From positions 62,001 through 126,000 of the IMG/VR virus record IMGVR_UViG_3300034012_003212: DNA of 64,000 bases, one strand, 5' to 3'. Shown here in pieces: positions 6,023 through 55,189 of the stretch. The notes beneath the pieces are model-generated. The model was given only the letters and a program-made list of their open reading frames with translations. It was not told where the DNA came from and did not search any database. Within the stretch, counting starts at the first letter, position 1. Every line of letters starts with the position of its first letter. A program made the translations under genes and the position numbers.

Positions 6023-7886
6023 AGTCTTCCTCCACCTTAGGCTTATTAAATTTCACATCACTGGATATCCTTGTGTCCTCGAACGCAGGCCGAAGTTCGA
6101 TTGAAGTCAATGAATCTTCGGATAATACGGTAGGGAGGCCGAAATTCACAAACTTTTCCACATCGTTGATATTAACTACACTTGGAACCTGGAAGTCCAC
6201 TCTGTCTATAATTTCTTCTGATGTTGTAGATGAATTGAATTCAACACTTCCTATGCCAAACTCAACGCTAGGGGTCTTCAATTCAACCATCTCCGTTATA
6301 TCCAGATCAACCGTTGGTGCTGTGAATTTTACTTCGGATAATTGATCATCAACTTTAGGGACATCGAAAGATATGTTTGATATATCAGTGGACACTGTCG
6401 GTAGTTCGAACGAGATGTCGTTGATTTCGGTGGCAACAGTAGGAGCTACGTATTCTATTGCTGCCAGCGACTCATCAACTTTAGGTTTGTCGAACGTGAC
6501 ATCTCCTATTGAACTATCAACTTTAGGCTTCTGTAGATTAACGTCGGATGATATAGTTGTCTCAAAAGAAGGTCTTACTAGATTCACATTTGAGATCTCT
6601 GTCTCGACCTTTGGCCTCATAAATTCTACTTGATTAGGCATATCTTCATCTAATTTTGGTTCTTCAAATTCAATTTGTGGTTCAATATTAACATCTTGCG
6701 TTGGCCTCTCAAATTCGATCGAGTTTCTTATGTCAGTTGTTACGCTCGGACGGCCAAATTCGATTAATCTTGGTGTTTCTCCTGTGATTCCGGCTGAGCT
6801 CTCAATGGCCTGCATTATCGTTCTTGCTTGTTCTGCTCTTGAAGCTGACATGTCCATGGAATTTAGTTCAGCTTGACGGATTCTTTCACGCTCTTCTCTT
6901 GGAAGAGCTTCAACCGTGTCAGCTTTAGTGAATTCCATATTATTCAGAAAATAGTCACGTATGTTGTTGTTGCTAGATGCAATTACATTCTCATAATTAT
7001 TTTCATACTCTCTTATGAACGGTGCTAAAAAACTCCTATAATTCGTCACATCACGAAAATCATTGAATGATGCACCGCTTCCCCCTTGTTTTATGATGAG
7101 ATCTCGTTTCATCTCACCGAGCATGTAGTTTAGAAGTTTATATGAGTTTGCCTCTTGTACCCTTCCAACTTTTATGTTAAATGATGCTCCGGCAGTTGTG
7201 TATTCATCCCCCTTTAGGGTTTTAGCAGGGACAGATGAACTAAAGTCGAATTCGCAATCAAAACACCTGAACGCAATGGCAGAAACGTGGTTCAACCAAT
7301 CAGGACGAAGAGAATTCCTGCCCTGTTGAACAAATGTCTTCAAATATCTCGCCTCTCCTGCTATCACCGTCATATTGAACCTCCGTTTATTCAACGGAAG
7401 AAGTTCACGAAAGTATAACCTGTCCCATGAAGCCTTTCTGTATAAATCAGCAAGAGCCGTCATACGAAGGTCCACCGTCTCGTAACAATCCAAAGTTAAT
7501 GTAACATCATCAATCTGGGTCTTTGAGTCGTTTGACGCAGAAGGATATCCCCATTTCCAAAGACCCTCGAGTCCTGATATCTGTTTAAAAAACCAAGGAA
7601 AATCATCAGAAACTCTGCTCAGAAGCCACCTGAACTCCTTGAGCGCTTCCGCCTTTCCTTGTTCTCCGGTCCTACGGAGATAACTTATAGCACTTTCATC
7701 CCTGTCCTCTGATAAGAGAAGACCTTGTGTGACTTCATTATCATTGTTGAGTGGCTCAAAATCAAATAGCACCCTAAATGTGATAAAAGACGGATCATTG
7801 TACCTTAACTTATCGTCAGGTGTTGTTCCAGCTGACTCGAAGACGAACTTCCTCTCGAGTCTACCGACGTGCATGATTCCGCTCAT
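6012..7886 (-). CDS. Probable baseplate/tail structural protein with a C-terminal 14-16 aa repeat array
   Basis: 624-aa ORF in the baseplate cluster; globular N-terminus (NDPSFITFRVLFDF...DCYETVDLRMTALADLYRKA) followed by repeats. Confidence 0.55.
   Translation of the reverse strand: MSGIMHVGRLERKFVFESAGTTPDDKLRYNDPSFITFRVLFDFEPLNNDNEVTQGLLLSEDRDESAISYLRRTGEQGKAEALKEFRWLLSRVSDDFPWFFKQISGLEGLWKWGYPSASNDSKTQIDDVTLTLDCYETVDLRMTALADLYRKASWDRLYFRELLPLNKRRFNMTVIAGEARYLKTFVQQGRNSLRPDWLNHVSAIAFRCFDCEFDFSSSVPAKTLKGDEYTTAGASFNIKVGRVQEANSYKLLNYMLGEMKRDLIIKQGGSGASFNDFRDVTNYRSFLAPFIREYENNYENVIASSNNNIRDYFLNNMEFTKADTVEALPREERERIRQAELNSMDMSASRAEQARTIMQAIESSAGITGETPRLIEFGRPSVTTDIRNSIEFERPTQDVNIEPQIEFEEPKLDEDMPNQVEFMRPKVETEISNVNLVRPSFETTISSDVNLQKPKVDSSIGDVTFDKPKVDESLAAIEYVAPTVATEINDISFELPTVSTDISNISFDVPKVDDQLSEVKFTAPTVDLDITEMVELKTPSVEFGIGSVEFNSSTTSEEIIDRVDFQVPSVVNINDVEKFVNFGLPTVLSEDSLTSIELRPAFEDTRISSDVKFNKPKVEEDFGS
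6015..6764 (-). repeat. About 17 degenerate protein repeats, consensus (V/I)xFxxPxVxxxI
   Basis: IEFGRPSVTTDIRNS / IEFERPTQDVNIEPQ / VEFMRPKVETEISN / VTFDKPKVDESLAA / ISFELPTVSTDISN / VKFNKPKVEEDFGS. Confidence 0.85.
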
Positions 7887-9121
7887 TCGCCTTGAAATTT
7901 TGTTATAAGCGCAGCATCTGGTGTGTTCTCTGTGTTTGGTATCGATAGATCAGAACGCTGCCATTCTTCTCTCCAGACAAAATCATCATGACCAAGTTCA
8001 AGGAACCTCTCATGGATCTTCTTGTCATAGTATGATGCTATATATCTCACGGCCCGTTGTATCTCTGCCCTTCTTGGTTCCTGTGTGTTGTTTCCGCCTG
8101 CATTCATGTACTGTATGTAACACAGTTTAGGAACGTGTATCATCCTCGTGCCAAGGAAACTCCTCACGACAAGTTCATAATCATCTGCTATGTGCAATCG
8201 AGGATTATGGCCTCCTATTTCGTGGTAGAACTTTCGCTCCCACGCGCGTATGTGATTGGGGCACGCAATGATATGCCTCATCGTTTTTGGATTGATGGGC
8301 ACAGTCTCACATGTGTACTGGGCGTTATTATAGTTCGTGGTGTAGTGTTTGCCGTAACCGTATCCCCAAAAATCCCCGTAATTAACACATCCTCCGGTTT
8401 CAAAAACCTCAGACGCGTCCGTGTATAGGAATTTTCCTTCCGGATATTCGCCGAAACCGCGTTTAACGTGATCGAGTGCCCAAGGAGTCAGAGCATCATC
8501 ATGATCGAGTTCGACGAGGTATTTTCCTGTACAAAGACCCGCTGCATTTCGCTTCACTTCTCCTATGATTCCGCTGGGTTTGTTTGATTTAAAAACACGT
8601 ATACGGTGGTCCTGGCTCGCAAGCTGCAGGAGCATATCAAAGGTCTTTCCTCCGTCATTTGAATCATCGTACAAGACCCATTCCCAATTTGAGTGCCACT
8701 GATTCTTGAGAGATGTGAAAACGCGATCGATTCGATTCCCGGTTCTGTACGTGGGGGTAAAACAGCTTATCAACGGATCTTCGTCATTCTTCTCCTGGTT
8801 TAAAATAGAGTCAATAAAACAGAAATACGCAGAATCTCCTATGTTGCCATCATCGGATTTTATATTTTCCACGTGTATCCATTTTCTCCTGATGCTATAT
8901 GGCGCGTTGTACAACTGTGCGAATAAAGACACATCAGGCCCGGTTGTTATGTACACCATAGGATTTATAGTCCTGATGATGAAATTGAGATCATCGGTAT
9001 GCGAAAAAAAGTGACACTCAAAATCATGGGATTCTGAAATCCACTGTACATTTGTTGAGTGTATCTCCGTCTTTACTTTACAATCCTTAGAGAATATCGC
9101 TACTACTGGTGTGATTGGCAT
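7883..9121 (-). CDS. Glycosyltransferase family 2 with an N-terminal extension
   Basis: ISCFTPTY...NWEWVLYDDS...GEVKRNAAGLCTGKYLVELDHDD...HIADDYEL (GT-A fold with DxD motif). Confidence 0.9.
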   Translation of the reverse strand: MPITPVVAIFSKDCKVKTEIHSTNVQWISESHDFECHFFSHTDDLNFIIRTINPMVYITTGPDVSLFAQLYNAPYSIRRKWIHVENIKSDDGNIGDSAYFCFIDSILNQEKNDEDPLISCFTPTYRTGNRIDRVFTSLKNQWHSNWEWVLYDDSNDGGKTFDMLLQLASQDHRIRVFKSNKPSGIIGEVKRNAAGLCTGKYLVELDHDDALTPWALDHVKRGFGEYPEGKFLYTDASEVFETGGCVNYGDFWGYGYGKHYTTNYNNAQYTCETVPINPKTMRHIIACPNHIRAWERKFYHEIGGHNPRLHIADDYELVVRSFLGTRMIHVPKLCYIQYMNAGGNNTQEPRRAEIQRAVRYIASYYDKKIHERFLELGHDDFVWREEWQRSDLSIPNTENTPDAALITKFQGE

Positions 9122-15525: not shown

Positions 15526-15563
15526 TATATATAAAAAAAGGGATACGCTTTTTACGTATCCCT
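15526..15563 (-). terminator. Intrinsic terminator whose U-tract runs into a late-promoter-like TATATATA
   Basis: Perfect 9-bp stem AGGGATACG/CGTATCCCT (15539-15563), then a T run and TATATATA, 5 nt before the gp13 ATG. Confidence 0.75.
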
Positions 15564-15603
15564 CGTTTCCTTATCAAATTATGATAGGGAAACCCCCGTT
15601 ATT

Positions 15604-16197: not shown

Positions 16198-16785
16198 TTA
16201 TCCGATTAAAGACCTATGGATTGCATCCTTAATCGCATCCGAAACATCTTCTTTATTCACACCTTCGAGTAAAACATCGAGCACTTCATCAAAAACACCT
16301 TCATCAAATGATTCTGACACAAATTGCATGAATTGTTTAGTTGGAAGATCGACCTTGATCTCAATACTTAAAGTGTTGCTAGATGTTTTTGCCTTTGCGA
16401 GAAGATTTGCTGCAAAACTTCCAGCCTTTGACTTTTTCTGCTGCTGTTGTTGAACAGGGGCCTCTACTGGTTTTACTGGTTCTGGAATGACTTCAATAGA
16501 CGCGGATTCTGTCTGTTTTTTATGTTCCTCGAATGATTTTGCTGGACCTGTTCTAGAAGGAAACCTTTCTTCCTTTGGATACATCCTTCTTAAAGAAACT
16601 TCATCCATTGCAATATTCCTATCATTGAGTATGATGAATGCCTTTCCGTAAAGATGCATAGGAATTGACCTACCGCTAGCCGGAATCACAACGTCCTGTT
16701 TTCCGTCGAACATCTGTTCGGCTGGTTCAACGACAGCAAATTTATCGTCAGTTAGCCACTGGATGAATTGTTGACCGTTACTCAT
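16198..16785 (-). CDS. Hypothetical protein
   Basis: 195-aa ORF with a central P/E/Q-rich linker. Confidence 0.65.
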   Translation of the reverse strand: MSNGQQFIQWLTDDKFAVVEPAEQMFDGKQDVVIPASGRSIPMHLYGKAFIILNDRNIAMDEVSLRRMYPKEERFPSRTGPAKSFEEHKKQTESASIEVIPEPVKPVEAPVQQQQQKKSKAGSFAANLLAKAKTSSNTLSIEIKVDLPTKQFMQFVSESFDEGVFDEVLDVLLEGVNKEDVSDAIKDAIHRSLIG

Positions 16786-17111
16786 GCAAACAACCTCATT
16801 AAATTATCTTCGTAAAATCTCCTTTTGTCTTGATCCATCTGATCGATCTGGGATAACACAGTATTTTTCAATTGTATTAGAACCTTAGAAAAATGGACCA
16901 CTGCACCATCCGCTAGAACGTCTTTTTGGTTAGACATGAAACTACCGGTTATTCCTTTTAACCTCCAGAATATGTAAGGAGGAGAATCTATATATTCAAT
17001 GGTAACCTGCTTCCAACCAGGAGGTTGTATGAACATCCTATCAGCTTGGTCCCATTCAAGTGATTCTTCTAAATTGTAATCGAGCTTCATACTATATTCC
17101 TTGGCCACCAA
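16782..17111 (-). CDS. Hypothetical protein
   Basis: 109-aa ORF overlapping both neighbours. Confidence 0.6.
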   Translation of the reverse strand: MVAKEYSMKLDYNLEESLEWDQADRMFIQPPGWKQVTIEYIDSPPYIFWRLKGITGSFMSNQKDVLADGAVVHFSKVLIQLKNTVLSQIDQMDQDKRRFYEDNLMRLFA

Positions 17112-17779
17112 TCATCTTTCTGTATACCCATGAGCTCTAAAACTAATTCCAGTTCCCGGTCTGCGTTTATCCTATTGGGTAATTGCCAGTGCTGGCTCCC
17201 AACGGGTTTGGTGTGCTTTACGACAACAGAATCAACTATTCCTAGACCTTCATACTTTAGTTCCTTTGCCCATATTATATCCTGCCCCCAGCCGGAGTAT
17301 GTGATCTTTAACGTCCATAGTAGATTCTTCAGGACCTCAGATTTAAACAATGGGCACATTATCTCGACAAAATTAGTCCTTCTGAATCCATTTTTATTCC
17401 TATTGACGACGAGTTCGAAGCTTCTAAAACTATCTTGTGACAATGACGGCTGGCATATATTGCAGTCATTTGATTCCGCCTCGTCGAATAATCTTACTAT
17501 GTCATCAACTGTACCAAAATCAACATCATAATCAGGAAGCCAGATGTACTTATACTTATTAAAAACTTCCGGCCAATGCGTGTTCAGTATATTGTACAGT
17601 ATATGGTGCTTGAACCCCTTGAATGAAAACGTCTTCATGGACTTTGAAATATCAAAATCCGGTGGTATTGTGTCGAACGATATGTGCGCAACATCGAATC
17701 CAGGGCCGCCGTACAAAGAATTGTAAAAGCCTCCTGGTGCTATCGTACACAACACTAGTCTATCGTTATTGCTTCGCAT
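17087..17779 (-). CDS. DUF707-family putative glycosyltransferase (GT-A-like)
   Basis: YKYIWLPDYD...CQPSLSQDS...RRTNFVEIMCPLF...SGWGQDIIW. Confidence 0.8.
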   Translation of the reverse strand: MRSNNDRLVLCTIAPGGFYNSLYGGPGFDVAHISFDTIPPDFDISKSMKTFSFKGFKHHILYNILNTHWPEVFNKYKYIWLPDYDVDFGTVDDIVRLFDEAESNDCNICQPSLSQDSFRSFELVVNRNKNGFRRTNFVEIMCPLFKSEVLKNLLWTLKITYSGWGQDIIWAKELKYEGLGIVDSVVVKHTKPVGSQHWQLPNRINADRELELVLELMGIQKDDWWPRNIV

Positions 17780-18002
17780 TCTGCTGCTTCTCTTGATTTG
17801 ACGACATTGACTCTATCGTCTTTGTCTTATCAAAAAATGTCACGGCGTCATATACCATCTTGGACTCCTGGAGTGTGTATGCGCCTCTTTGCTGAGCCCG
17901 CTCAACTGCACTTATGAGTATGTTGATCGCTTTTACTGGATCATCAACAACAAATTGAGGTTGTTCCTGTTGTTTTTCTGCCGTCGTATTTGTTTCTTCC
18001 AT
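17766..18002 (-). CDS. Small conserved-type hypothetical viral protein
   Basis: AINILISAVERAQQRGAYTLQESKMVYDAV. Confidence 0.65.
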   Translation of the reverse strand: MEETNTTAEKQQEQPQFVVDDPVKAINILISAVERAQQRGAYTLQESKMVYDAVTFFDKTKTIESMSSNQEKQQNAKQ

Positions 18003-18011
18003 CTTTACTCC

Positions 18012-18854
18012 TTATTTAAGTATGAATTTTTTTAATAGATTAAGATAATCCTGTTGTTTCATCGATTCTAATCTTTCTTTGTCCGATACTATGCATTCCA
18101 TCTCATTGATAAAAGCATCATTGTTTCCGTCAAAAATAGAAACAATGTTGAATTCATATGGGGTTTTTGCAAGTTCATCTGAATCAAAACCATCTACAAT
18201 CTTTTGTGCAACATCAAAATGCCTCTCGTAGTAGTGTGTGTTGTCAGAGAAATGGTGGTATGTGCCCAGTTTAATGTTTTCATACCCCCTCAACTTCAAT
18301 TGATGCAGCATCGATTGCTGTACTGTTGAGAAGAATGGCGCGTCATATTGCAGTCCATAGAATATATCGTTTGATCTCATCTGTACCTTCATGTTTAATT
18401 TCGAATCTCTGACCCAAAAATTAACATACATCGTACACACGAAATCTTTTACACCACTTTTCTGGTAATCAGGGGTGTTAAACACCATAACAGCTTGTCT
18501 TGTGTTTATATCATTCGCGAGACAGTCCAATGCCCACTGGAACTGATCATGATTCCTCTTTTGAATGATGTAGCCATAATTGGAATTTATGATTCCATTC
18601 ACTCTGAGATTATCCCAGAAATTAGAGAAGTGGCGGATCTTGTCAGTAGAAAGATCGCACAACATGTACCACCACAATTCTCCTGCAAAATATTTCCAGT
18701 TGAACTTCCTCGATGAGAAGTTCATGATACAGAGTCTGGGATCGATCTCTAGGTGTGTGAGAGTCTTTTCCCTCACCTTTAGGTTTCTTGGCGCACATTC
18801 ATCCTGCATTGTAATCAGAAGATCGTACACACACTGATTTAGGCTTTTAGGCAT
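18012..18854 (-). CDS. gp42: dCMP hydroxymethylase-like enzyme (thymidylate synthase superfamily, cytosine-specific clade)
   Basis: YFAGELWWY, KDFVCTMY and MRSNDIFYGLQYD parallel T4 gp42 (RELEWY, SDFMCTNT, MRSNDVVFGFRND); Asp rather than Asn at the specificity position. Confidence 0.8.
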   Translation of the reverse strand: MPKSLNQCVYDLLITMQDECAPRNLKVREKTLTHLEIDPRLCIMNFSSRKFNWKYFAGELWWYMLCDLSTDKIRHFSNFWDNLRVNGIINSNYGYIIQKRNHDQFQWALDCLANDINTRQAVMVFNTPDYQKSGVKDFVCTMYVNFWVRDSKLNMKVQMRSNDIFYGLQYDAPFFSTVQQSMLHQLKLRGYENIKLGTYHHFSDNTHYYERHFDVAQKIVDGFDSDELAKTPYEFNIVSIFDGNNDAFINEMECIVSDKERLESMKQQDYLNLLKKFILK

Positions 18855-18884
18855 ATCTATTTTATAGATTTACTGACCGACTGT

Positions 18885-19970
18885 TTAAAAGAGCGCAACA
18901 GATCTGTTGGGATTTTGAAATTTATTCTTCTCGTCATTCTCAAAATTGTACTGATAACTGCTTCTTGAAAGATGCACGGATCCAGGCTTTTCCATGAATT
19001 TTGATGAGTATTCCTCTGGATCGATTGTATACCAAAAATCTGGCCATGTTATAGGGGCAAATCCCAATCTAGAACTATGTTCCATAAGTTCATCGTTGAA
19101 CAATCTCATAACATTGGATCGTTCTTCCCTTGAACCAAAGAATGGAGTTCCCTTGTACCAACCGGTTTTAGGTATACGTCTGTCCTCGTTTTCTATTGGG
19201 AGGAGGCACACAGGAGAAACAGTTTCAAGTTCGTACGAATCCATAAGTTTTACGAGGGATTCCATGTATTTGTTGCATAACTTTACGGCGGAATCCTGTG
19301 GATTAGATTCGCGAAGCAAATGGTGCCTAACATCTATATTACCGAAGTATGTTATGACATTCTTTGGGTAAACACCATCATAGATGAATTTGGATAAATC
19401 GCCGTCTTTTATGGCTCCATATAGCGTCTTTCCGTCGTTTCTATTTATGTTCGATCCAGGAACATACACTGAAACAGTGTGACTATCGCCCATGGCAAAC
19501 ACTTCGGATCGAAGGACGACTCGAACGGTTGGCACATTTGAACATATGTCACTGAACTGTGATGGATTCAATGATTTCCAAAAATCTTCACATGAGTTCA
19601 TCCTAGACAGAAGAACTGTTCCATAATCTGGCATTCTTTCATTCAAGCAGAATATGTCTCCGTTGAATATAGCCAGTCTGTTTATTCGATGTGCGTTTTC
19701 GTCACTCGCGCCCGAGAACATATTGAATGTTCCCTTATAGTCCATGGGAAGAAGGACTAGCCATGCGTCGAATTCATTCACGTCCTGTCCCTTTTCGAGT
19801 AACTTTGCATCAATTCCGGCGTGTCTCAGCTGATTGATGACAAGAAATGTCCAGGAGGATTTATGGCTTTCTGGCTTTTTGCTATACGTAGAAATAACGT
19901 CATCTACACAGACCTTTTTGCCATGCAATCTTTTTGATAGATCATAGACATCAATAAATGTTTGCATCAC
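18885..19970 (-). CDS. Two-domain protein: T4 beta-glucosyltransferase-like N-terminal domain plus SGNH-like domain; putative DNA-modifying enzyme
   Basis: N-terminus DVNEFDAWLV...FNMFSG...FNGDIFCLNERMPDY; C-terminus GDSH, DGKTLYG, YFGNID, SVHL; lies directly upstream of the hydroxymethylase. Confidence 0.5.
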   Translation of the reverse strand: MMQTFIDVYDLSKRLHGKKVCVDDVISTYSKKPESHKSSWTFLVINQLRHAGIDAKLLEKGQDVNEFDAWLVLLPMDYKGTFNMFSGASDENAHRINRLAIFNGDIFCLNERMPDYGTVLLSRMNSCEDFWKSLNPSQFSDICSNVPTVRVVLRSEVFAMGDSHTVSVYVPGSNINRNDGKTLYGAIKDGDLSKFIYDGVYPKNVITYFGNIDVRHHLLRESNPQDSAVKLCNKYMESLVKLMDSYELETVSPVCLLPIENEDRRIPKTGWYKGTPFFGSREERSNVMRLFNDELMEHSSRLGFAPITWPDFWYTIDPEEYSSKFMEKPGSVHLSRSSYQYNFENDEKNKFQNPNRSVALF

Positions 19971-20263
19971 TTTCCATTCAGATAGTTTTCTAATGCCTGT
20001 ATGTATGCGACAGCATCCAAGAGATTATCTTGTTTATGTGTATAGCTCTCTCTGGATAGTTTTAGGGCTATCATGGCCTTGTACATGTGTTCTGCGTCAA
20101 GTGTTAGGCCAGTCATGCCATTGAATATTTGCGCAGCTCTCGCCATACCTTCCGAGAATGGTCCATACTGTCTTTCCTTTTCCTCCGACCTCTGGTTAAC
20201 TATTTTATCTGCCTGTTGCAGTATACTATCTTCATTGGTCTTTGTTTGTTTCTTGGGTTTCAT
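19967..20263 (-). CDS. DUF6378-family protein (MazG-like all-alpha nucleotide pyrophosphatase candidate)
   Basis: ILQQADKIVNQRSEEKERQYGPF...MIALKLSRE...DNLLDAVAYI. Confidence 0.75.
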   Translation of the reverse strand: MKPKKQTKTNEDSILQQADKIVNQRSEEKERQYGPFSEGMARAAQIFNGMTGLTLDAEHMYKAMIALKLSRESYTHKQDNLLDAVAYIQALENYLNGK

Positions 20264-20280
20264 ATGGTATAGTTATGATT

Positions 20281-20700
20281 CTAAAAGACTTCTTCTGTTT
20301 TTACCCATTCCATGTATTTTATCAGGACTCTGTCCTTTGGTTTAACGCGGTTGTCATGTCTTTGAAAAATCATCCATGAATCTCTTGCGTATTCCCCGAT
20401 TCCATGCAATTCACTAGGATCTTCCCCGTTCCACTGGAGCCATTCATTCGAGAATCGTATGAGCTTCTTTGAACGAATATTCTGAAACCCGAGTGGTTTT
20501 ATACATCGCGCGACTTCAATTGGATCTGCCTTAGATAATCTATCTGCATTGGGGTACTTTTCAAAAAATTCATGTCTGACCAGGTCAACTTGACGAAAAC
20601 TCGTCTGGTTCAACATCATGCAGACCACCAGCATCTTCCATGGATCATCTCGGTATATTTCTTGTCTCAGATTATACGGACTTAATTTAGGATGTTTCAT
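20281..20700 (-). CDS. MBD4-like HhH-GPD DNA glycosylase (T/U:G mismatch type)
   Basis: DDPWKMLVVCMMLNQT...FFEKYP...IKPLG...ELHGIGEYARDSWMIF...VKPKDRVLIKY; catalytic Asp retained (cf. MBD4 VHPEDHKLNKY). Confidence 0.85.
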   Translation of the reverse strand: MKHPKLSPYNLRQEIYRDDPWKMLVVCMMLNQTSFRQVDLVRHEFFEKYPNADRLSKADPIEVARCIKPLGFQNIRSKKLIRFSNEWLQWNGEDPSELHGIGEYARDSWMIFQRHDNRVKPKDRVLIKYMEWVKTEEVF

Positions 20701-21731: not shown

Positions 21732-22373
21732 TTACACTTTATACCATTCACGATTTCTAGATTCATCACTCTCGCACCAATCATCAAACGATATGGCATT
21801 TGCATCCTTTTCTGAAAGTATCGGATCAATTCCTAGATCTTTCCAGTCACAATCAAATGAGTCCCATCTGATTGATCTTTCCTTTTCATGAAACCTGTTC
21901 TCGTCGCATTTATAGCAAACATCCGCAACATCACTTAGAACCTGAAACCCATTTGCAAAACCGCTAGGAATCCATACCATCTTTGGTTCATTATCATTTA
22001 GATGTATCTTCACATGCTTACCGAATGTAGGGGATCCTCTACGGAGATCTAGTTCAACGAGCAAGATCTCGCCCCTGACAACTCTTATCAGTTTCCCCAT
22101 ACCAAACATGTACTGAAAGTGCATACCTCGGATCACGCCACGCTTTGATCTTGAGTGATTATCCTGAACGAATGATCCCGGAAGATCGTTATACGCGAAT
22201 GAGATCTTATTGAAACTTTCTTGAAAGAAACCACGATCATCCTCAAATCTCTTTCCTGTTATGATTTCCACGCCACCGAGAACAACTTCTATGCTATCTA
22301 TTGCATTTTTGCTCATAAGGCTGATTTTCTTGTGTATTGAATCCAAGGATTCTCGTGAATTTTTTAGTTCCAT
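21732..22373 (-). CDS. rmlC: dTDP-4-dehydrorhamnose 3,5-epimerase
   Basis: FEDDRGFFQESF...FVQDNHSRSKRGVIRGMHFQ...DLRRGSPTFG...WIPSGFANGFQVLS. Confidence 0.95.
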   Translation of the reverse strand: MELKNSRESLDSIHKKISLMSKNAIDSIEVVLGGVEIITGKRFEDDRGFFQESFNKISFAYNDLPGSFVQDNHSRSKRGVIRGMHFQYMFGMGKLIRVVRGEILLVELDLRRGSPTFGKHVKIHLNDNEPKMVWIPSGFANGFQVLSDVADVCYKCDENRFHEKERSIRWDSFDCDWKDLGIDPILSEKDANAISFDDWCESDESRNREWYKV

Positions 22374-24347: not shown

Positions 24348-26222
24348 TTAAATTTTTCCTTTGAGTGCTTTTCTTACAGCGTCACGGTATTCAGAATTTC
24401 CGCTATTCACGTTCTCAAGAACGGAATAAGGATTTGCTGATTCGTTTAGCGTTTGGACTGAACTACCATCAAAATTTGCGATTTCCGGCCTCGATGCCCA
24501 GAAGTTGCGAATCTGATATGGCGTATCTAATTTTATGTACTGAGCAGCAGCTGCGATTCGCTTCCTGCCATCATTACTCATAGATTCCCATATAGGAGCG
24601 TATTCCGTCGGCATCTCTGCGATCCACTTAGGAAGATTTCGACGCTCTCTATCTGCTGCCAGTGCAGATTCCCAAACATTCACTACATCCTTTTCCGAGA
24701 ATACTATAGCTGTGCTCAATGCTTCGCTCACTATCTCTTTTTCAGTTTGCTTAAGCTGTACGAACTTGCTACGCTTTTCCGGCGAAAGATAACGAAGGAA
24801 CGGGAATTTGGAGGACTCATTCATAACGCTTGCCTTCTCTTTTTTGGCTTCGCTTATCATGTGGTCCACTTTCTCCGATAAGTTTCGTCCACCGATCATG
24901 GCAGCTCTCTTCTCCATGATCTTTTTTGTTTTCTTCTTTTCTTTAACATTGATCGATTCTGCTATGTAATCTCCATAGCCTATTGATTTGTCGAGTTGTT
25001 CTGCGAGGTAGTTACTGTAGCCTATGTTACTATTGAGATTTTCGGCCAAGTAATCATTGTGTTTGATCGCATTGTCAAGATTCTCTCCAAGATATTCTTG
25101 GTATCGAATTGAATTATTGAGATTTTCTGAAAGGTAGTTAGAGTAATCTATCGCCTTATCAAAATTCTCAGCTATATAGTTAGAATAGTCAATCGTCTGG
25201 TTGATCTTGTTGGAAAGATAATTCGAGAACGATATGCTCTTGTCGAGATTCTCTGCAAGGTAGTTCTGATATTCAATAGAAACATTGAACCTATTTGCAA
25301 GGTAATTCGTGTACTCTGTGATATCATTCATATCGCGGCGTGCCTTCTTTGACTCGGAGATCGTCTTATCAACGTTCTCAGAGAGGTAATTGCTATACTT
25401 GATAGCACCGTTAAGCTTTTGTGCGAGATAATTAGAATATTCGCTCAGCTTAGATATTGTTTTTTCTGACCCAAGACTCTTCTTGGTGAGGACCTGTATT
25501 TTCTTCTCAAGGAGCTCTATTTCCTTCTTAACGTGTTTAGAGTACTCATTGAAATCCCTTTCAGAAATCATACCTGTGTTTTGGTTATTTTGGCTCATAT
25601 TATCACTTTTATTTTGCGTTTGTTTTCCTTTTGTTTCATTCGAAAGAAATGGCAATTCTGAATCATACATCTCAGAGACGTCATATATCTGTACATTTGA
25701 TTTGCCGGAGAATCCGAGGGATTCATTCACCAAACTAAGGGTGGCATTCTCAAATCCAGGATCAGCAACCAAATCGTATGTGAAAATCTTCTTTAGTTTT
25801 ACGCGTTTATCGGATCCTACAACGCCAGCAGCCCTGCTGCTTATGGACAAAGGAACCCCAGCTTCTATCAATTTCTTCGCCTGGCGGCCGGGATCTGTAT
25901 CTAGTAGACGAACGCGCCCTCTAACTGTCCTTGTTGCATTATCATAATCCAAGCTCTCGATTATGTGAGAGACTTTCTGAAGAGAGATATCAAATTTATC
26001 CGGATGATCTAATTCACCCATCAACCTTTTCGAACTTATTTTTGTTTTCAGGTATTCGAGGTGGGGCAAATATTCATTCTCTTCGTACAATCGGTCGTTA
26101 TTGTTAACAACACCAAACTGAGCAAATACTCCTTCGAGTATGACTGCTCCTGTTGAATCTGACTTGCTCTCAAGTATCGCGTTCGAATTCTCGAGAATAA
26201 GTAGCACTTTTTGTTGGTCCAT
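24348..26222 (-). CDS. gp21: Prohead protease (gp21/S78-S80-like) fused to a scaffold/core domain
   Basis: ILEGVFAQFGVVNNNDRLY...GELDHP...SHIIE...LLDTDPG...ISSRAAG...YDLVADPGFENA, followed by 14-aa helical repeats. Confidence 0.9.
   Translation of the reverse strand: MDQQKVLLILENSNAILESKSDSTGAVILEGVFAQFGVVNNNDRLYEENEYLPHLEYLKTKISSKRLMGELDHPDKFDISLQKVSHIIESLDYDNATRTVRGRVRLLDTDPGRQAKKLIEAGVPLSISSRAAGVVGSDKRVKLKKIFTYDLVADPGFENATLSLVNESLGFSGKSNVQIYDVSEMYDSELPFLSNETKGKQTQNKSDNMSQNNQNTGMISERDFNEYSKHVKKEIELLEKKIQVLTKKSLGSEKTISKLSEYSNYLAQKLNGAIKYSNYLSENVDKTISESKKARRDMNDITEYTNYLANRFNVSIEYQNYLAENLDKSISFSNYLSNKINQTIDYSNYIAENFDKAIDYSNYLSENLNNSIRYQEYLGENLDNAIKHNDYLAENLNSNIGYSNYLAEQLDKSIGYGDYIAESINVKEKKKTKKIMEKRAAMIGGRNLSEKVDHMISEAKKEKASVMNESSKFPFLRYLSPEKRSKFVQLKQTEKEIVSEALSTAIVFSEKDVVNVWESALAADRERRNLPKWIAEMPTEYAPIWESMSNDGRKRIAAAAQYIKLDTPYQIRNFWASRPEIANFDGSSVQTLNESANPYSVLENVNSGNSEYRDAVRKALKGKI
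24948..25445 (-). repeat. About 11 copies of a 14-aa repeat, xYSNYLAENLDKSI
   Basis: EYQNYLAENLDKSI / DYSNYIAENFDKAI / DYSNYLSENLNNSI / RYQEYLGENLDNAI / GYSNYLAEQLDKSI. Confidence 0.9.
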
Positions 26223-27405: not shown

Positions 27406-28074
27406 TCACACATGAATTGCAAGCAGCTCCGGAAGTTGAACATACTTAAACATCTTCCCTAGTCTATCGTATGTGTATCCATCGTTGTAATAACCCTTCT
27501 CTCCTATGAAATGATCCCAGCCACACTCCATCATGGATTTTGCACGAACAACAACCTGTAGTGTATCTATGTTCTGGAATACAGGAGGGACTCCACTTAT
27601 TACTTGAGGAGCATTACCTAAGTGAGAAGGAAGGGGGCCTAGATGCAATATCTTGCATACAGAAAACTCTGAATCAGGGTTCTCATTGAGTATATCTATA
27701 TTTTTTTTAACAAAATCAGGAAAAAGAAGATTATCATCATCGAGATGGATGATGAATTTGCATACATCATTTTGTATGTCATCCGCAAGTATATTATTCA
27801 TAACATGATGACGCACACCGCCTCCGTATGAATTTGTATTCACTGCGGTATAATCATACACAAGCTTTACGTGTTCCGGTAGCACTTCCTGTATTTCCTC
27901 TACGATTGAGCATGCGTGATCTTCTTTTGGGCCGTCTGAACACACTATCTGAAGAATATCAAGATTATTTGGTTTGATCTGCCATGCAACAGATGTTAAG
28001 CATCTTTTTATTATATCTCCATTTCTCTTATATGTGGGAGTTATGACTGCGATGTATGGATTGATGTTTTGCAT
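27406..28074 (-). CDS. Glycosyltransferase family 2
   Basis: IAVITPTYKR...CSDG...IIHLDDDNLLFPD. Confidence 0.85.
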   Translation of the reverse strand: MQNINPYIAVITPTYKRNGDIIKRCLTSVAWQIKPNNLDILQIVCSDGPKEDHACSIVEEIQEVLPEHVKLVYDYTAVNTNSYGGGVRHHVMNNILADDIQNDVCKFIIHLDDDNLLFPDFVKKNIDILNENPDSEFSVCKILHLGPLPSHLGNAPQVISGVPPVFQNIDTLQVVVRAKSMMECGWDHFIGEKGYYNDGYTYDRLGKMFKYVQLPELLAIHV

Positions 28075-41608: not shown

Positions 41609-41612
41609 GCTC

Positions 41613-52230: not shown

Positions 52231-52791
52231 TTAGTTCTCTTCATCAAACTCGATTAATTCATCGGGGTCCAACAGTCCCATTATCTTGGCATTCAGTTTA
52301 TCAAGATACGATTGAACTTTTGACTTCCTAACCATTGCTTCGTTCAGACAGATGAGAACGGGCTCAACGATTGCTGCAAGTTTTAATGCAGAATTGTATC
52401 CAGTTCCTGTCGCCTTCTGAAGATAATAATACAGAGCTTCTAAGTGTATGTTGGTCATGCCAAAATTATACTCATCGCTCTGAAGTGTGGCTGATTCTTC
52501 CTTTGCTTCTTTCAAAGCATTGTGTAAACGAATAACGCCTAGCGCATCCTTTCCATCGTACTTTACATCATTTTCAATGAAATTAAGGCATTTTGTTACA
52601 AATGACCTTTCAGTTGAAACTATGTATTTCCTTTCATCGAAATTCTTGGAAACAACTTGAATTTGTTCCCGCAACTCAGAAATCTCAGACTCGCTAAGAG
52701 TCCTAAAATTCTTCGTTTCCTCGGTTGAAGCATCACTTGTTGTGATAATTTCTCCCTCTATAGCATCAACTTGTGCTATCTCTTCTCTCAT
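52231..52791 (-). CDS. Hypothetical helical protein
   Basis: 186-aa ORF. Confidence 0.65.
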   Translation of the reverse strand: MREEIAQVDAIEGEIITTSDASTEETKNFRTLSESEISELREQIQVVSKNFDERKYIVSTERSFVTKCLNFIENDVKYDGKDALGVIRLHNALKEAKEESATLQSDEYNFGMTNIHLEALYYYLQKATGTGYNSALKLAAIVEPVLICLNEAMVRKSKVQSYLDKLNAKIMGLLDPDELIEFDEEN

Positions 52792-53557: not shown

Positions 53558-54023
53558 ATGTACTAAAAAAATATTTTAGGTAAGGAAAAGACCATATAAT
53601 AAAACAAGCGAATATGACCCTTCTCACAAACCACCAGAACCCTATCTCGTACATTAACGGTGAAAATTTGATGAGATATGAATTCGTTTCTTCGATTCTT
53701 TCGACGGTTGGCATTATGATTTCCGATAGGTTATTGTCAACCAACCAGTTTATCATAGGTTTTATCCTATCGAGAACAAGAGTTTTTTGCACGTCATTGG
53801 GGAGGCTTTGTTCTTCAAATGGAACGGACCTCACTGTGTACATTCTACCTACCCAGTCATGGCGTAAATTGAACTCAAGCCATTTTTCATTTCCCCTGTT
53901 TTTCCGTATGAATAGCCAGATGTAAACGTAGAAATAAATGTCCTTAAGTCCAGTTTTTAGCAAAAAAATATTTATCATTCTCTGAATTCTCCGAGTATAG
54001 TCAGATGCTCTTCCATTCATCAT
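53544..54023 (-). CDS. Hypothetical protein with a C-terminal transmembrane segment
   Basis: 159-aa ORF; IGFWWFVRRVIFACFIIWSF. Confidence 0.55.
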   Translation of the reverse strand: MMNGRASDYTRRIQRMINIFLLKTGLKDIYFYVYIWLFIRKNRGNEKWLEFNLRHDWVGRMYTVRSVPFEEQSLPNDVQKTLVLDRIKPMINWLVDNNLSEIIMPTVERIEETNSYLIKFSPLMYEIGFWWFVRRVIFACFIIWSFPYLKYFFSTYVSK

Positions 54024-54669
54024 ATAAATGCTGCAATCTATTTTTCAAGATTCGTCTTCCCTTATGAATGTATATCTTGCACTTGGGCATGTCTAGTTTA
54101 TACTTTTCTGCAAGATCCTTGTAACTCATCTTGTGGACTTCCCGATCCCAAATTATCCCCTTGTATCTATCATCAAGCTCTCGTATTTCTTTTATTACTG
54201 ATCGAATGAGGTATCTGAGGGCATCGTTTTTTATCTGTTTATCCGCATCGGGATTATCAATGTACTGATCCTTGACAGAAGATTCTATAAACATCTTAGC
54301 CTGAGACTGAGACGAATCCGAAGATCCTGCGGTGTGTGTTAATTCACCGTTGTTCATGGAAACTTCTTTGTATTTTTTCTTTTTACTCAGCTTGATAAGA
54401 GCTTCATTTTTTGCTATGGTATAAGACCATGTAGAAAATTTGAAGTATTCATTATAGCTGTCAATATTTATAAATATCTTCAGTAATGCATCACTGACGC
54501 AATCTTCCACGTCCATGTGTGAAAGTTCATTCGCTGCATTATAGTATTTATTTATAAAGAACTGAAAACGAGGCTTGAGCTCATTGTACAAAATGATGTA
54601 ATTCTCATGCGTCCTCGTGTTGAAATACTGCATGCCCAATTGCTGCAGATCTCTACCTTCTCTTCTCAT
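54001..54669 (-). CDS. ECF-type sigma-70 family RNA polymerase sigma factor
   Basis: Region 2 DVEDCVSDALLKIF...KFSTWSYTIAKN; region 4 MSYKDLAEKYKL...KIYIHKGRRILK. Likely start MRREG at 54669. Confidence 0.85.
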   Translation of the reverse strand: MRREGRDLQQLGMQYFNTRTHENYIILYNELKPRFQFFINKYYNAANELSHMDVEDCVSDALLKIFINIDSYNEYFKFSTWSYTIAKNEALIKLSKKKKYKEVSMNNGELTHTAGSSDSSQSQAKMFIESSVKDQYIDNPDADKQIKNDALRYLIRSVIKEIRELDDRYKGIIWDREVHKMSYKDLAEKYKLDMPKCKIYIHKGRRILKNRLQHLYDEWKSI

Positions 54670-55189
54670 TATATTCCTCCAAAATATAAGGGTAGTGATT
54701 ATGGAAATCACTGAAACTTCCGTGTCTTATCTTTAGCTTATCGGAATTTAAGACTGCGAGATGACGAATATCTCGATACTCTTCTTTCCAGTATATGCAC
54801 TTAAATCCTGAATTTATGAGGATTTTCATACATACTTCGCATGGAGAGTGTGTTAGAAGAACGACATAATCCTCTGGATTGTGTTCGTTGAACTTTGCAA
54901 CAAGATTCATTTCTGCATGGACAAACCCACTAGATCCGGATTCGAGGGAATTCTCCTCGCCGGACGTTGCTGGATTTATTTCAGCTCCTGGATATGAACC
55001 GTTGTAACCAAAACTGCCAATCTTTGAAAAGTCTTTTTTCAGTGCAATTGCACCAACCTTCAAAGTCTTTGAAACAGAAAGGCTTGCAATCTGACAAACA
55101 AAGTCAGTGAAAACATCTATCTTCTGGGACTTCCTCTTTGAACCCATGATCGAATCAACTTCCGTGGATGGTCTGAACTCGCTGCTCAT
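54653..55189 (-). CDS. dCMP deaminase
   Basis: KVGAI...GYNG...HAEMN...THSPCEVCMK (zinc-binding HAE and PCxxC). Confidence 0.9.
   Translation of the reverse strand: MSSEFRPSTEVDSIMGSKRKSQKIDVFTDFVCQIASLSVSKTLKVGAIALKKDFSKIGSFGYNGSYPGAEINPATSGEENSLESGSSGFVHAEMNLVAKFNEHNPEDYVVLLTHSPCEVCMKILINSGFKCIYWKEEYRDIRHLAVLNSDKLKIRHGSFSDFHNHYPYILEEYNEKRR

What the first reader, a model, noticed from the sequence alone, without database searches (positions are those of the whole stretch)
17087..20700. Candidate novel cytosine-hypermodification operon with its own mismatch-repair glycosylase
Seen: five co-oriented genes, in order MBD4-like glycosylase > DUF6378 > BGT-N/SGNH fusion > dCMP hydroxymethylase-like > (small ORF) > DUF707 GT-A-like. 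Established: in the thymidylate synthase superfamily, Asp at this position (T4 gp42 RSNDxxxGxxxD) selects dCMP and Asn selects dUMP; T4 pairs gp42 with a dCTPase and a hmC glucosyltransferase. Inference: this phage makes 5hm-dCMP (or a related C5 derivative), clears dCTP with DUF6378, decorates the base after replication with the SGNH fusion and/or DUF707, and repairs deamination with MBD4. No intact T4 alpha/beta glucosyltransferase is present in the window, so the final base may be uncharacterised.
Basis: partly seen in the sequence, partly recalled or inferred. Interest (0 to 1): 0.9.

Follow-up and report, generated by a model that had tools for sequence, protein, structure and literature searches.

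The report
Phage hydroxymethylcytosine modification cluster with glycosylase
A large uncultured freshwater T4-like phage carries a six-gene cluster that most likely makes 5-hydroxymethylcytosine DNA, tailors it with an uncharacterised but widespread enzyme pair, and includes its own MBD4-type mismatch glycosylase; the final base is unknown and could be found using related phages that are already in culture.

Summary
Six co-oriented minus-strand genes at 17087-20700 encode an MBD4-type glycosylase, DUF6378, a BGT-N-like/SGNH fusion, a thymidylate-synthase homologue, a 78-aa protein and a DUF707/GT-A-like protein.

The synthase homologue carries every residue that marks T4-type 5hm-dCMP synthases, and lacks the residue that marks 5-hydroxy-dCMP synthases.

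- DUF6378 shows no similarity to any dCTPase. It is the translationally coupled partner of the SGNH fusion (adjacent in 76 of 88 loci) and coexists with true gp56-like dCTPases in 42 loci.
- The SGNH fusion family (820 protein clusters, at least 567 viral contigs) is uncharacterised. It recurs in at least five cluster layouts, next to dCMP-type synthase homologues, HMUDK-like kinases and gp56. In Aeromonas phages 44RR and 31 it is fused to such a kinase; these phages have genes 42 and 56 but no glucosyltransferase.
- Among sequenced phages the glycosylase is almost confined to the XP12 group (5-methylcytosine DNA), again beside the synthase homologue. This supports repair of deaminated modified cytosine.
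- A DNA role for DUF707 is plausible but weakly supported.

Verdict: a new variant of the T4-type cytosine replacement system, with unknown tailoring chemistry.

The parts
20281..20700 (-). MBD4-type HhH-GPD mismatch DNA glycosylase (glycosylase domain only, no methyl-CpG-binding domain); first gene of the co-directional run
   Evidence: PDB phmmer 4.5e-30 to the MBD4 glycosylase domain over residues 4-133, with Asp kept at the position that differs (Asp vs Asn) between MBD4 PDB chains (PKD vs PED). Pfam HhH-GPD. Phage relatives lie almost only in the XP12 group. Some database gene calls start later (112 aa), but the MBD4 alignment starts at residue 4 of the 139-aa ORF.
19967..20263 (-). DUF6378 helical protein; conserved, translationally coupled partner of the SGNH fusion; activity unknown
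   Evidence: Pfam 6.6e-12. TGATG stop/start overlap with the next gene. Immediately upstream of the SGNH fusion in 76 of 88 loci, abutting or overlapping in 69 of 76. Fused elsewhere to dUTPase, a synthase homologue, HAD and PRA-PH domains. AlphaFold model pLDDT 90, with no PDB fold match.
18885..19970 (-). Two-domain protein: N-terminal T4 beta-glucosyltransferase-N-like Rossmann domain (about 19-150) plus C-terminal SGNH/GDSL esterase or acyltransferase domain (about 155-340); candidate 5hmC-tailoring enzyme
   Evidence: Model pLDDT 91.8. Foldseek PDB hits to SGNH esterases at E 4e-5. Invariant GDSH 161-164, GNID 210-213 and H333. hhalign to a BGT profile: 84%, E 7e-6. 820 relatives with no Pfam domain. 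Only uncharacterised matches in BFVD.
18012..18854 (-). Thymidylate-synthase homologue with the T4-type dCMP hydroxymethylase (5hm-dCMP synthase) signature
   Evidence: Best PDB hit is T4 dCMP hydroxymethylase, 1.8e-18. D137 (ThyA L143 position), C140, R160-S161-N162-D163 (D169 kept) and D171 (N177 position), identical to T4 gp42 and unlike RB69 gp48 or XP12 gp59. The criteria come from PMC13326640.
17766..18002 (-). 78-aa conserved protein of unknown function
   Evidence: No family hit. Conserved in the same position in the window's lineage only (E 8e-23 to 2e-20).
17087..17779 (-). DUF707-family GT-A-like glycosyltransferase candidate
   Evidence: Pfam DUF707, 26.5 bits against a cut-off of 24.1. 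Invariant W-x-P-D83-x-D85 (DxD) in the family alignment. Distant relatives lie among GT1, GT2, GLF and DegT genes.
16198..17111 (-). Two downstream conserved ORFs (109 aa and 195 aa) of unknown function, co-transcribed by position; membership in the module is uncertain
   Evidence: No family hits. Conserved with the cluster only in the window's lineage. The co-directional run ends at a strong terminator-like hairpin at 15538-15564.
54653..55189 (-). dCMP deaminase-like gene, a distant accessory of pyrimidine metabolism
   Evidence: phrog_174 dCMP deaminase, 1.5e-19; phmmer 1.2e-12 to a metagenomic dCMP deaminase.

Best explanation
The cluster is a cytosine-replacement and tailoring module of a roughly 260-kb T4-like phage.

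Step 1 (shown by sequence signature, activity inferred): the synthase homologue converts dCMP to 5-hydroxymethyl-dCMP. After phosphorylation, this enters phage DNA in place of C.

Step 2 (inferred from domain architecture and conserved context): the BGT-N-like domain of the 361-aa protein engages 5hmC, most likely in DNA as T4 beta-glucosyltransferase does. Its SGNH domain (Ser163, Asn211, His333) then carries out an acyl-transfer or ester-hydrolysis step on the 5-CH2OH group or a derivative of it. DUF6378 acts as an obligatory partner subunit. The specific guess is O-acylation, for example acetylation, of 5hmC.

Step 3 (weakly inferred): the DUF707 GT-A-like enzyme may add a sugar.

Step 4 (inferred, with cross-lineage support): the MBD4-type glycosylase removes T or 5hmU opposite G. 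These arise when C5-modified cytosines deaminate, and the host's uracil glycosylase cannot recognise them.

The confidence value refers to the general statement, namely a 5hmC-based DNA modification module with a dedicated glycosylase. The specific SGNH chemistry is rated at only about 0.3.
For: Synthase homologue:
- T4 dCMP hydroxymethylase is the best solved relative.
- All four diagnostic positions equal those of T4 gp42, using criteria from PMC13326640.

SGNH fusion:
- Confident model, SGNH fold and conserved Ser/Gly/Asn/His blocks.
- N-domain similarity to the part of beta-gt that in T4 carries the proposed catalytic Asp100.
- All seven synthase homologues next to family members in independent contexts have Asp at the N177 position.
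- In the 88 loci surveyed, the family co-occurs with gp56-like dCTPase (42), HMUDK-like kinase (40) and beta-gt-like genes (2).
- It is fused to an HMUDK-like kinase in Aeromonas phage 44RR (E 4e-86). That phage has a T4-type gene 42 plus gene 56 but no glucosyltransferase (PMC2993671).

DUF6378:
- Coupled to the SGNH gene.
- Fused to a dCMP-type synthase homologue in P0175.

Glycosylase:
- 4.5e-30 to MBD4, with Asp kept at the position that differs (Asp vs Asn) between MBD4 PDB chains.
- 13 of 16 phage records with a relative are XP12-group phages. XP12 DNA is 5mC (PMC7653180), and the gene sits two genes upstream of the synthase homologue.
- Of 11 synthase homologues within 8 kb of phage MBD4-like genes, 9 have Asp177, 1 has Asn and 1 is truncated.
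- The gene directly abuts the SGNH gene in further layouts.
Against: - No experiment exists; no DNA composition is known for this phage.
- No dCTPase, dNMP kinase or HMUDK-like kinase was found in the 64-kb window. The other roughly 197 kb of the contig could not be searched.
- The BGT-N similarity is remote (45% with a single sequence, 84% with profiles), and the residue aligned with BGT Asp100 is Asn.
- The survey loci are not all independent, since several are near-identical contigs.
- 47 of 80 MBD4-like loci showed none of the queried partners within 8 kb.
- The cluster lies inside the structural gene region, and its expression timing could not be inferred.
Confidence: 0.7

Rival explanations
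1. The phage makes 5-methylcytosine DNA like XP12: the synthase homologue is a dCMP methyltransferase, the MBD4-like enzyme repairs T:G, and the SGNH fusion and DUF707 have nothing to do with the base.
For: The glycosylase's sequenced-phage relatives are XP12-group phages. All dCMP-directed synthase homologues share Asp at the N177 position, so that residue alone does not separate methyl from hydroxymethyl products.
Against: The position equivalent to ThyA L143 is Asp, as in T4 gp42, and not Asn as in XP12 gp59. PMC13326640 links an acidic residue there to hydroxymethyl products. T4 gp42 is the best PDB relative. The adjacent protein has a BGT-N-like domain, and its family travels with kinases of the 5-hydroxymethylpyrimidine DNA kinase type and with beta-gt-like genes.
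Confidence: 0.1
2. DUF6378 is the pathway's dCTP or dCDP pyrophosphatase, belonging to a new structural class.
For: It is fused in other proteins to nucleotide-pool enzymes (dUTPase, PRA-PH/MazG, HAD, a synthase homologue). Its invariant Lys, Arg, Asp and Tyr residues could bind nucleotide and metal. No gp56-like gene is present in the window.
Against: There is no similarity to gp56, MazG or dUTPase by sequence, profile or fold, although the profile test lacked power. A gp56-like dCTPase coexists with it in the same cluster in 42 loci. It is tightly and translationally coupled to the SGNH gene.
Confidence: 0.15
3. The DUF707 protein, together with RmlC and the GT2 genes of the window, glycosylates virion proteins or a host surface glycan rather than DNA. 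Only four genes (glycosylase, DUF6378, SGNH fusion, synthase homologue) form the base-modification module.
For: Distant DUF707 relatives lie in clusters of GT1, GT2, Gly_transf_sug, GLF, DegT and PglD genes with no nucleotide-metabolism genes. The DUF707 link to the synthase homologue is confined to one syntenic lineage. The cluster lies among structural genes beside RmlC and the capsid gene.
Against: GT-A-fold enzymes associated with thymidylate-synthase homologues do glycosylate 5hmC in other phages (preprint 10.1101/2023.12.21.572611). The gene is packed immediately after the synthase homologue and overlaps the 78-aa ORF.
Confidence: 0.4
4. The MBD4-like glycosylase is not a fidelity enzyme but part of the modification or conflict machinery. 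For example, it might remove wrongly modified or unmodified bases as quality control, or act against competing DNA.
For: It directly abuts the SGNH fusion gene in several unrelated layouts, which is tighter than a general repair role requires. PADLOC gives a weak match to a model named as a nicking endonuclease of restriction systems (5e-5).
Against: It shows full-length similarity to MBD4, whose known substrates, from established knowledge, are T, U and 5hmU opposite G. It is present in 5mC phages that lack the SGNH fusion. From established knowledge, Mig.MthI and Vsr are mismatch-repair genes paired with 5mC-forming systems.
Confidence: 0.15

Closest known systems
T4 cytosine replacement system (gp42 dCMP hydroxymethylase, gp56 dCTPase, gp1 kinase, alpha/beta-glucosyltransferases)
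   Same: A synthase homologue with the same diagnostic residues as gp42. A tailoring gene sits next to it, as beta-gt sits next to gene 42 in T4. The tailoring protein's N-domain resembles the beta-gt N-domain. Sister clusters carry gp56-like genes.
   Different: There is no UDP-glucose-binding domain; an SGNH domain takes its place. An extra DUF6378 partner and an MBD4-type glycosylase are present. No gp56 or gp1 homologue was seen in the window. Identity to gp42 is only 24%.
Xanthomonas phage XP12 5-methylcytosine module (gp61 glycosylase-like, gp60 HAD, gp59 synthase homologue, gp58 dCMP deaminase, DHFR)
   Same: An MBD4-like glycosylase heads a co-directional module that contains a dCMP-directed synthase homologue.
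   Different: XP12's synthase homologue has Asn, not Asp, at the L143 position and its DNA is 5mC (PMC7653180). XP12 has no SGNH fusion, DUF6378 or DUF707 in the region shown.
Thymidine hypermodification pathways built on 5-hmdU DNA kinase (phages SP10, ViI, M6, PaMx11; PMC5889632, PMC8989533)
   Same: Sister clusters of the SGNH fusion carry HMUDK-domain kinases, PLP-enzyme-like genes and methyltransferases. The Aeromonas phage protein fuses the two.
   Different: The associated synthase homologues are all the dCMP type, not the dUMP type. The window's own cluster has no kinase. No SGNH enzyme was found described for those pathways in the searched literature.
RB69/DLP3 5-hydroxycytosine arabinosylation clusters (PMC13326640)
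   Same: A synthase homologue with Asp at the N177 position, clustered with tailoring enzymes.
   Different: The window enzyme keeps Asp at the D169 position, whereas all tested 5ho-dCMP synthases have Asn there. There are no GT-B arabinosyltransferases and no arabinose-nucleotide genes here.
Mismatch repair genes that accompany 5mC-forming systems (Mig.MthI T:G glycosylase, Vsr endonuclease); cited from established knowledge
   Same: The logic is the same: a system that fills DNA with C5-modified cytosine brings its own repair of the deamination product. The PDB entry 1kea, a G-T mismatch repair enzyme, is a weaker relative (4e-4).
   Different: The window enzyme is far closer to eukaryotic MBD4 (4.5e-30) than to the Mig type, and it is phage-encoded within a biosynthetic cluster.

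Membership tests
T4-type dCMP hydroxymethylase (5hm-dCMP synthase) within the thymidylate synthase superfamily | Thymidylate synthase fold with the catalytic Cys (ThyA C146) | tested here: met
   Pfam Thymidylat_synt 6.6e-17. Cys140 is invariant in alignments with T4 gp42, RB69 gp48 and XP12 gp59.
T4-type dCMP hydroxymethylase (5hm-dCMP synthase) within the thymidylate synthase superfamily | Asp in place of ThyA Asn177 (dCMP rather than dUMP) | tested here: met
   D171 aligns with T4 D179.
T4-type dCMP hydroxymethylase (5hm-dCMP synthase) within the thymidylate synthase superfamily | Acidic residue in place of ThyA Leu143 (hydration of the methylene intermediate) | tested here: met
   D137 in KDFVC, as in T4 SDFMC; XP12 has Asn. 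Criterion from PMC13326640.
T4-type dCMP hydroxymethylase (5hm-dCMP synthase) within the thymidylate synthase superfamily | Formation of 5hm-dCMP from dCMP and methylene-tetrahydrofolate | not testable with these tools
   Needs an enzyme assay or in vivo expression with LC-MS.
5-hydroxy-dCMP synthase (RB69 gp48 type) | Asn in place of ThyA Asp169 | tested here: not met
   The window has RSND with Asp163; RB69 gp48 has RSQN. Criterion.
MBD4-type HhH-GPD mismatch glycosylase | Full-length similarity to the MBD4 glycosylase domain with the HhH motif | tested here: met
   phmmer 4.5e-30 over residues 4-133 against 6-136; the next-best family (Mig, MutY, Nth) scores only 4e-4 or weaker.
MBD4-type HhH-GPD mismatch glycosylase | Catalytic Asp after the HhH motif | tested here: met
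   Asp123 (PKD) aligns with the Asp that is Asn in a variant PDB chain, and it is invariant in the phage family.
MBD4-type HhH-GPD mismatch glycosylase | Methyl-CpG-binding domain | tested here: not met
   The protein is 139 aa and consists of the glycosylase domain only. It is therefore a relative of the catalytic domain, not of full-length MBD4.
MBD4-type HhH-GPD mismatch glycosylase | Excision of T, U or 5hmU opposite G | not testable with these tools
   Needs an oligonucleotide glycosylase assay.
SGNH/GDSL hydrolase superfamily | SGNH fold | tested here: met
   Foldseek PDB: sialate O-acetylesterases and acetyl-xylan esterases, E 4e-5 to 1e-3, probability 1.0, target TM 0.5-0.6, on a model with pLDDT 91.8.
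SGNH/GDSL hydrolase superfamily | Block I Ser (GDS), block III Asn (GxND), block V His | tested here: met
   Invariant G161-D162-S163-H164, G210-N211-I212-D213 and H333 in 41 sequences.
SGNH/GDSL hydrolase superfamily | Block V Asp three residues before His (full triad) | tested here: not met
   The position is Gly330; the nearest invariant acid is E327. Ser-His dyad members of the superfamily are known (from established knowledge), so this does not exclude activity.
T4 beta-glucosyltransferase (GT-B) | N-terminal Rossmann-like acceptor domain | tested here: inconclusive
   hhalign 84% probability, E 7e-6, 108 columns; only 45% against T4 beta-gt alone. A domain-only fold search could not be run.
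T4 beta-glucosyltransferase (GT-B) | C-terminal UDP-glucose-binding domain and catalytic Asp100 | tested here: not met
   The C-terminal half is an SGNH domain. The residue aligned with Asp100 is Asn110.
dCTPase (T4 gp56 / MazG / all-alpha NTP pyrophosphatase), for DUF6378 | Sequence, profile or fold similarity to a known dCTP pyrophosphatase | tested here: not met
   No PDB hit by sequence or profile. hhalign to gp56 and PRA-PH gave 0.2% (the control also failed). Foldseek best E was 1.4.
GT-A glycosyltransferase, for the DUF707 protein | Family membership and the DxD motif | tested here: met
   Pfam DUF707 above the gathering score. Invariant D83-x-D85 preceded by W80-x-P. The GT-A clan placement of DUF707 is from memory, and the fold was not tested.
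5-hmdU DNA kinase-based hypermodification cluster | An HMUDK-domain kinase in the cluster | tested here: not met
   No ORF in the window matches an HMUDK-like profile at E up to 10. It is present in sister clusters.

The most novel reading that the evidence does not exclude
The DUF6378 / BGT-N-SGNH pair is a new class of DNA base-tailoring enzyme. It would put an ester-linked (acyl or aminoacyl) group on the hydroxymethyl of 5hmC, or use such an ester as an activated intermediate in parallel with kinase activation. That would give a DNA base chemistry not yet described. The enzyme pair is present in hundreds of aquatic phage genomes and in the cultured Aeromonas phages 44RR, 31 and relatives, whose Hm-dCMP tailoring was still unresolved in the 2010 review.
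Probability: 0.3. Interest if true: 0.9.

Novelty: new variant of a known kind. Interest (0 to 1): 0.78.

Why it matters
Phage DNA hypermodifications decide the outcome of restriction, CRISPR and glycosylase-based defence, and they are a source of enzymes for epigenetic sequencing.

This cluster points to three things:
- **An uncharacterised enzyme pair.** It is widespread (820 protein clusters) and tied to 5hmC pathways in at least five gene layouts.
- **A candidate for an old open point.** It could explain how Aeromonas T4-like phages, which have genes 42 and 56 but no glucosyltransferase, treat their Hm-dCMP. These phages are in culture, so this is directly testable.
- **A recurring design rule.** Phages that replace C with a C5-modified cytosine (5mC in XP12, 5hmC-type and 5hoC-type here) often carry an MBD4-type mismatch glycosylase, presumably to repair deamination products that host uracil glycosylase cannot see. 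I found no description of this in the searchable literature.

Tried and rejected
- **Near-identity DNA search** against sequenced phages: no match.
- **PDB searches for the SGNH fusion, DUF6378 and DUF707:** sequence or profile searches gave nothing.
- **hhalign of DUF6378 against gp56 and PRA-PH:** nothing, but the positive control (gp56 vs PRA-PH) also failed, so the test has no power.
- **Foldseek of the DUF6378 model:** no significant hit.
- **Foldseek of the full SGNH-fusion model against BFVD:** only uncharacterised relatives, so it did not help to name the N-domain.
- **Word-indexed homologue search for the glycosylase:** only 4 hits. It was replaced by tblastn against phages and a viral-contig scan.
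- **Promoter and terminator consensus scans and the T4 late-promoter motif:** at background level near the cluster, so expression timing is unresolved.
- **Model coordinates:** not exposed, so catalytic-triad geometry and the domain interface could not be checked.
- **C5-methyltransferase motif scan** around MBD4-like genes: none found.
- **PADLOC:** no defence-system membership apart from a weak HhH match.
- **5-hydroxy-dCMP synthase (RB69 type):** considered and rejected on the D169 position.
- **True thymidylate synthase or dUMP hydroxymethylase:** considered and rejected on the N177 position.

Full report
**What is there**

The finding's coordinates match six co-oriented minus-strand ORFs. 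In order of transcription they are 20281-20700 (139 aa), 19967-20263 (98 aa), 18885-19970 (361 aa), 18012-18854 (280 aa), 17766-18002 (78 aa) and 17087-17779 (230 aa). Pfam calls HhH-GPD, DUF6378, nothing, Thymidylat_synt, nothing and DUF707 respectively.

The window is part of a 260,658-bp contig from JGI metagenome 3300034012. It has a T4-type major capsid protein, prohead protease, lysozyme, baseplate and neck genes and a terminase. No close DNA relative exists among sequenced phages.

The cluster sits between the capsid gene and neck/baseplate genes. Upstream it is bounded by two opposite-strand ORFs, and downstream by a strong terminator-like hairpin at 15538-15564.

**The synthase homologue**

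Its best solved relative is T4 dCMP hydroxymethylase (1.8e-18). CMP hydroxymethylase MilA and true thymidylate synthases follow at about 1e-9.

A 2026 paper (PMC13326640) gives diagnostic positions in E. coli ThyA numbering:
- Asn177 to Asp selects dCMP.
- Leu143 to Asp or Glu goes with hydroxymethyl rather than methyl products.
- Asp169 to Asn marks the newly found 5-hydroxy-dCMP synthases, such as RB69 gp48.

The signatures in the alignment with the reference enzymes:

| Enzyme | Residue at C-3 | Catalytic Cys | 166-169 motif | N177 position |
|---|---|---|---|---|
| Window protein | Asp137 | Cys140 | RSND | Asp171 |
| T4 gp42 | Asp | Cys | RSND | Asp |
| RB69 gp48 | Glu | Cys | RSQN | Asp |
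| XP12 gp59 | Asn | Cys | RSSD | Asp |

The activity itself is inferred.

**The 361-aa protein**

It has no Pfam or NCBIfam match. It belongs to a large uncharacterised family of 820 database clusters. Relatives are encoded on at least 567 IMG/VR contigs.

An AlphaFold model is confident (pLDDT 91.8, pTM 0.90). Its C-terminal half matches SGNH/GDSL esterases, namely sialate O-acetylesterases and acetyl-xylan esterases (Foldseek E 4e-5, probability 1.0). GDSH (161-164), GNID (210-213) and His333 are invariant, but the usual Asp three residues before the His is missing.

The N-terminal half aligns with residues 2-123 of T4 beta-glucosyltransferase when family profiles are used on both sides (84% probability, E 7e-6). 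Against T4 beta-gt alone the probability is 45%. The residue aligned with Asp100 of beta-gt, which the viral glycosyltransferase preprint names as the catalytic aspartate, is Asn.

The protein is not a glucosyltransferase.

**Neighbourhood survey of the SGNH fusion**

I called ORFs in 88 loci that encode the family (33-100% identity, flanks up to 10 kb) and searched them with the cluster proteins and with proteins from alternative clusters.

DUF6378 lies immediately upstream on the same strand in 76 loci. In 69 of those 76 the two genes abut or overlap. In the window the junction is TGATG, a one-base stop/start overlap.

Counts of other partners among the 88 loci:

| Partner near the SGNH fusion | Loci |
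|---|---|
| Inositol-1-phosphate-synthase-like | 51 |
| T4 gp56-like dCTPase | 42 |
| HMUDK-domain kinase | 40 |
| Methyltransf_21 | 39 |
| Synthase homologue | 13 |
| MBD4-like glycosylase | 11 |
| T4 beta-gt-like | 2 |

The window's exact layout (glycosylase, DUF6378, SGNH fusion, synthase homologue, 78-aa ORF, DUF707, two further ORFs) occurs only in its own syntenic lineage. Conservation of the last four genes therefore says little.

The first four components do recombine across at least five layouts. Every synthase homologue found next to the family in independent contexts has the dCMP-type signature. The loci are not all independent, because several are near-identical contigs.

**Link to cultured phages**

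The family has full-length relatives in 43 sequenced phages, 38 of them T4-like Aeromonas phages.

In 44RR2.8t the homologous part is the N-terminus of the 795-aa ORF233c. Its C-terminal residues 428-780 match a profile of the metagenomic HMUDK-like kinases at E 4e-86. This fusion mirrors the gene adjacency seen in metagenomes.

The 2010 review of T4-related genomes says that phages 44RR, 31 and 25 have homologues of genes 42 and 56 but no glucosyltransferase. It adds that it is unknown whether gene-42 phages that lack glucosyltransferases, such as RB69 and JS98, modify Hm-dCMP in another way (PMC2993671). The 44RR gene 42 product has the T4-type signature.

The SGNH fusion is thus a concrete candidate for the missing tailoring enzyme in phages that can be grown.

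**DUF6378**

- It has no relative among solved structures by sequence or profile.
- A confident model (pLDDT 90) has no significant fold match (best E 1.4).
- It coexists with true gp56-like dCTPases in the same clusters.

It is nevertheless a nucleotide-metabolism domain. Among 861 representative relatives, some are fused to dUTPase, to PRA-PH/MazG, to a HAD hydrolase, or to a synthase homologue. That fused synthase homologue itself has the dCMP hydroxymethylase-type signature.

Its invariant residues are Gly34, Lys68, Arg71, Asp79, Asp83 and Tyr87. My reading is that it is a partner or adaptor subunit of the SGNH fusion. A catalytic role on nucleotides cannot be excluded.

**The glycosylase**

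It aligns end to end with the MBD4 glycosylase domain (4.5e-30) and keeps Asp at the position where otherwise identical MBD4 PDB chains have Asp or Asn. It has no methyl-CpG-binding domain.

Among about 50,700 phage records only 16 encode a relative. Thirteen of these are XP12-group phages. XP12 DNA carries 5-methylcytosine (PMC7653180). In XP12 the gene lies two genes upstream of the synthase homologue, with dCMP deaminase and DHFR following.

I surveyed 80 viral contigs with MBD4-like genes:
- 17 have the SGNH fusion within 8 kb. In several it is directly adjacent even without DUF6378.
- 11 have a synthase homologue within 8 kb. Of these, 9 have Asp at the N177 position, 1 has Asn and 1 is truncated at that position.
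- The Asp-type signatures include the T4 type, two of the RB69 5-hydroxy type, and one with Leu143 plus Asp177.
- 47 loci showed none of my queries.

Deamination of 5mC gives T, and deamination of 5hmC gives 5hmU. Uracil glycosylase cannot remove either, and both are known MBD4 substrates (established knowledge). A phage that replaces all C would therefore benefit from such an enzyme. I found no paper describing this association.

**DUF707**

The family has an invariant W-x-P-D-x-D motif, consistent with a GT-A glycosyltransferase. Distant relatives lie in phage-like contigs among several glycosyltransferases and sugar-nucleotide enzymes, with no nucleotide-metabolism genes nearby.

GT-A enzymes associated with synthase homologues are reported to glycosylate 5hmC (preprint 10.1101/2023.12.21.572611), so a DNA role is possible. 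However, the window also has RmlC and two GT2 genes near structural genes. A role in glycosylating something other than DNA is about equally likely.

**What is missing**

No gp56-like dCTPase, thymidylate-kinase-like enzyme, HMUDK-like kinase, inositol-phosphate-synthase-like gene or beta-gt-like gene is detectable in the 64-kb window. A dCMP deaminase-like gene lies at 54653-55189. T4 gp1-type dNMP kinase and alpha-gt were not used as queries. The remaining roughly 197 kb of the contig could not be examined.

**Verdict**

The best explanation is a 5hmC-based cytosine replacement and tailoring module with a dedicated mismatch glycosylase (confidence 0.7).

The tailoring chemistry of the DUF6378/SGNH pair is unknown. 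My committed guess is acyl transfer to, or ester hydrolysis at, the 5-hydroxymethyl group on DNA (about 0.3).

This is a new variant of the T4-type system rather than a categorically new one. It exposes a widespread uncharacterised enzyme pair and a recurring glycosylase association, and both can be tested with existing cultured phages.

Noticed in passing
L013-L059 (for example L017:338-7016): The commonest cluster around the SGNH fusion is DUF6378 > SGNH fusion > inositol-1-phosphate-synthase-like > Methyltransf_21 > HMUDK-like kinase > gp56-like dCTPase. In L017 and L023 a T4 beta-gt-like gene takes the place of, or precedes, the methyltransferase. This looks like a separate, undescribed cytosine hypermodification pathway, possibly involving a cyclitol.
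   Followed up: partly
L001:5959-8346 (Aeromonas phage 44RR2.8t ORF233c): This 795-aa protein is a fusion of the SGNH-fusion family (N-terminus) with an HMUDK-like kinase (residues 428-780, E 4e-86). The upstream neighbour is annotated as a sodium:solute (glucose-type) symporter homologue.
   Followed up: partly
L065:11178-13281 and L079:11165-15186: A third cluster type has the SGNH fusion followed by a CitG-like triphosphoribosyl-transferase-like gene (L079 only), 400-aa proteins without a family, and a weak PLP-enzyme-like gene, before gp56-like and DNA polymerase B genes.
   Followed up: no
L167 and L168 (synthase homologue at 1328-2056, MBD4-like at 7944-8375): Two contigs carry an MBD4-like glycosylase about 6 kb from a synthase homologue with the RB69-type 5-hydroxy-dCMP signature (E, C, RSQN, D). 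The glycosylase therefore also accompanies 5hoC-type systems.
   Followed up: no
window 21732-22373 (-), 27406-28074 (-), 7883-9121 (-): A dTDP-4-dehydrorhamnose 3,5-epimerase (RmlC, 8e-54) sits directly beside the major capsid gene, and two GT2 glycosyltransferases lie among structural genes. These suggest phage-directed glycosylation, possibly with a rhamnose-type sugar, of an unknown target.
   Followed up: no
window 52766-55189 (-): A small block within the otherwise structural window holds a PD-(D/E)XK exonuclease (phrog_298, 1.4e-43), a sigma-factor-like protein (54001-54711) and a dCMP deaminase-like protein (54653-55189).
   Followed up: partly
window 20281-20700 and 18012-18854: Public gene calls for the same contig start later than the longest ORFs: 112 aa instead of 139 aa for the glycosylase, and 265 aa instead of 280 aa for the synthase homologue in one record. 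The MBD4 alignment begins at residue 4 of the long form, so the short glycosylase call is probably truncated.
   Followed up: partly
window 24348-26222 (-) and 37094-41635 (-): The prohead protease domain occupies only the first 160 or so residues of a 624-aa protein. A 1513-aa ORF was not searched against any family library. Six other ORFs of 186-651 aa in the 33-57 kb part of the window gave no Pfam match.
   Followed up: no
P0146, P0160, P0175, P0245, P0252 (representatives): DUF6378 occurs as a domain fused to dUTPase, to a dCMP-type synthase homologue, to a HAD hydrolase and to PRA-PH/MazG. PHROGs labels its families 'phosphofructokinase', which looks like a propagated misannotation.
   Followed up: partly
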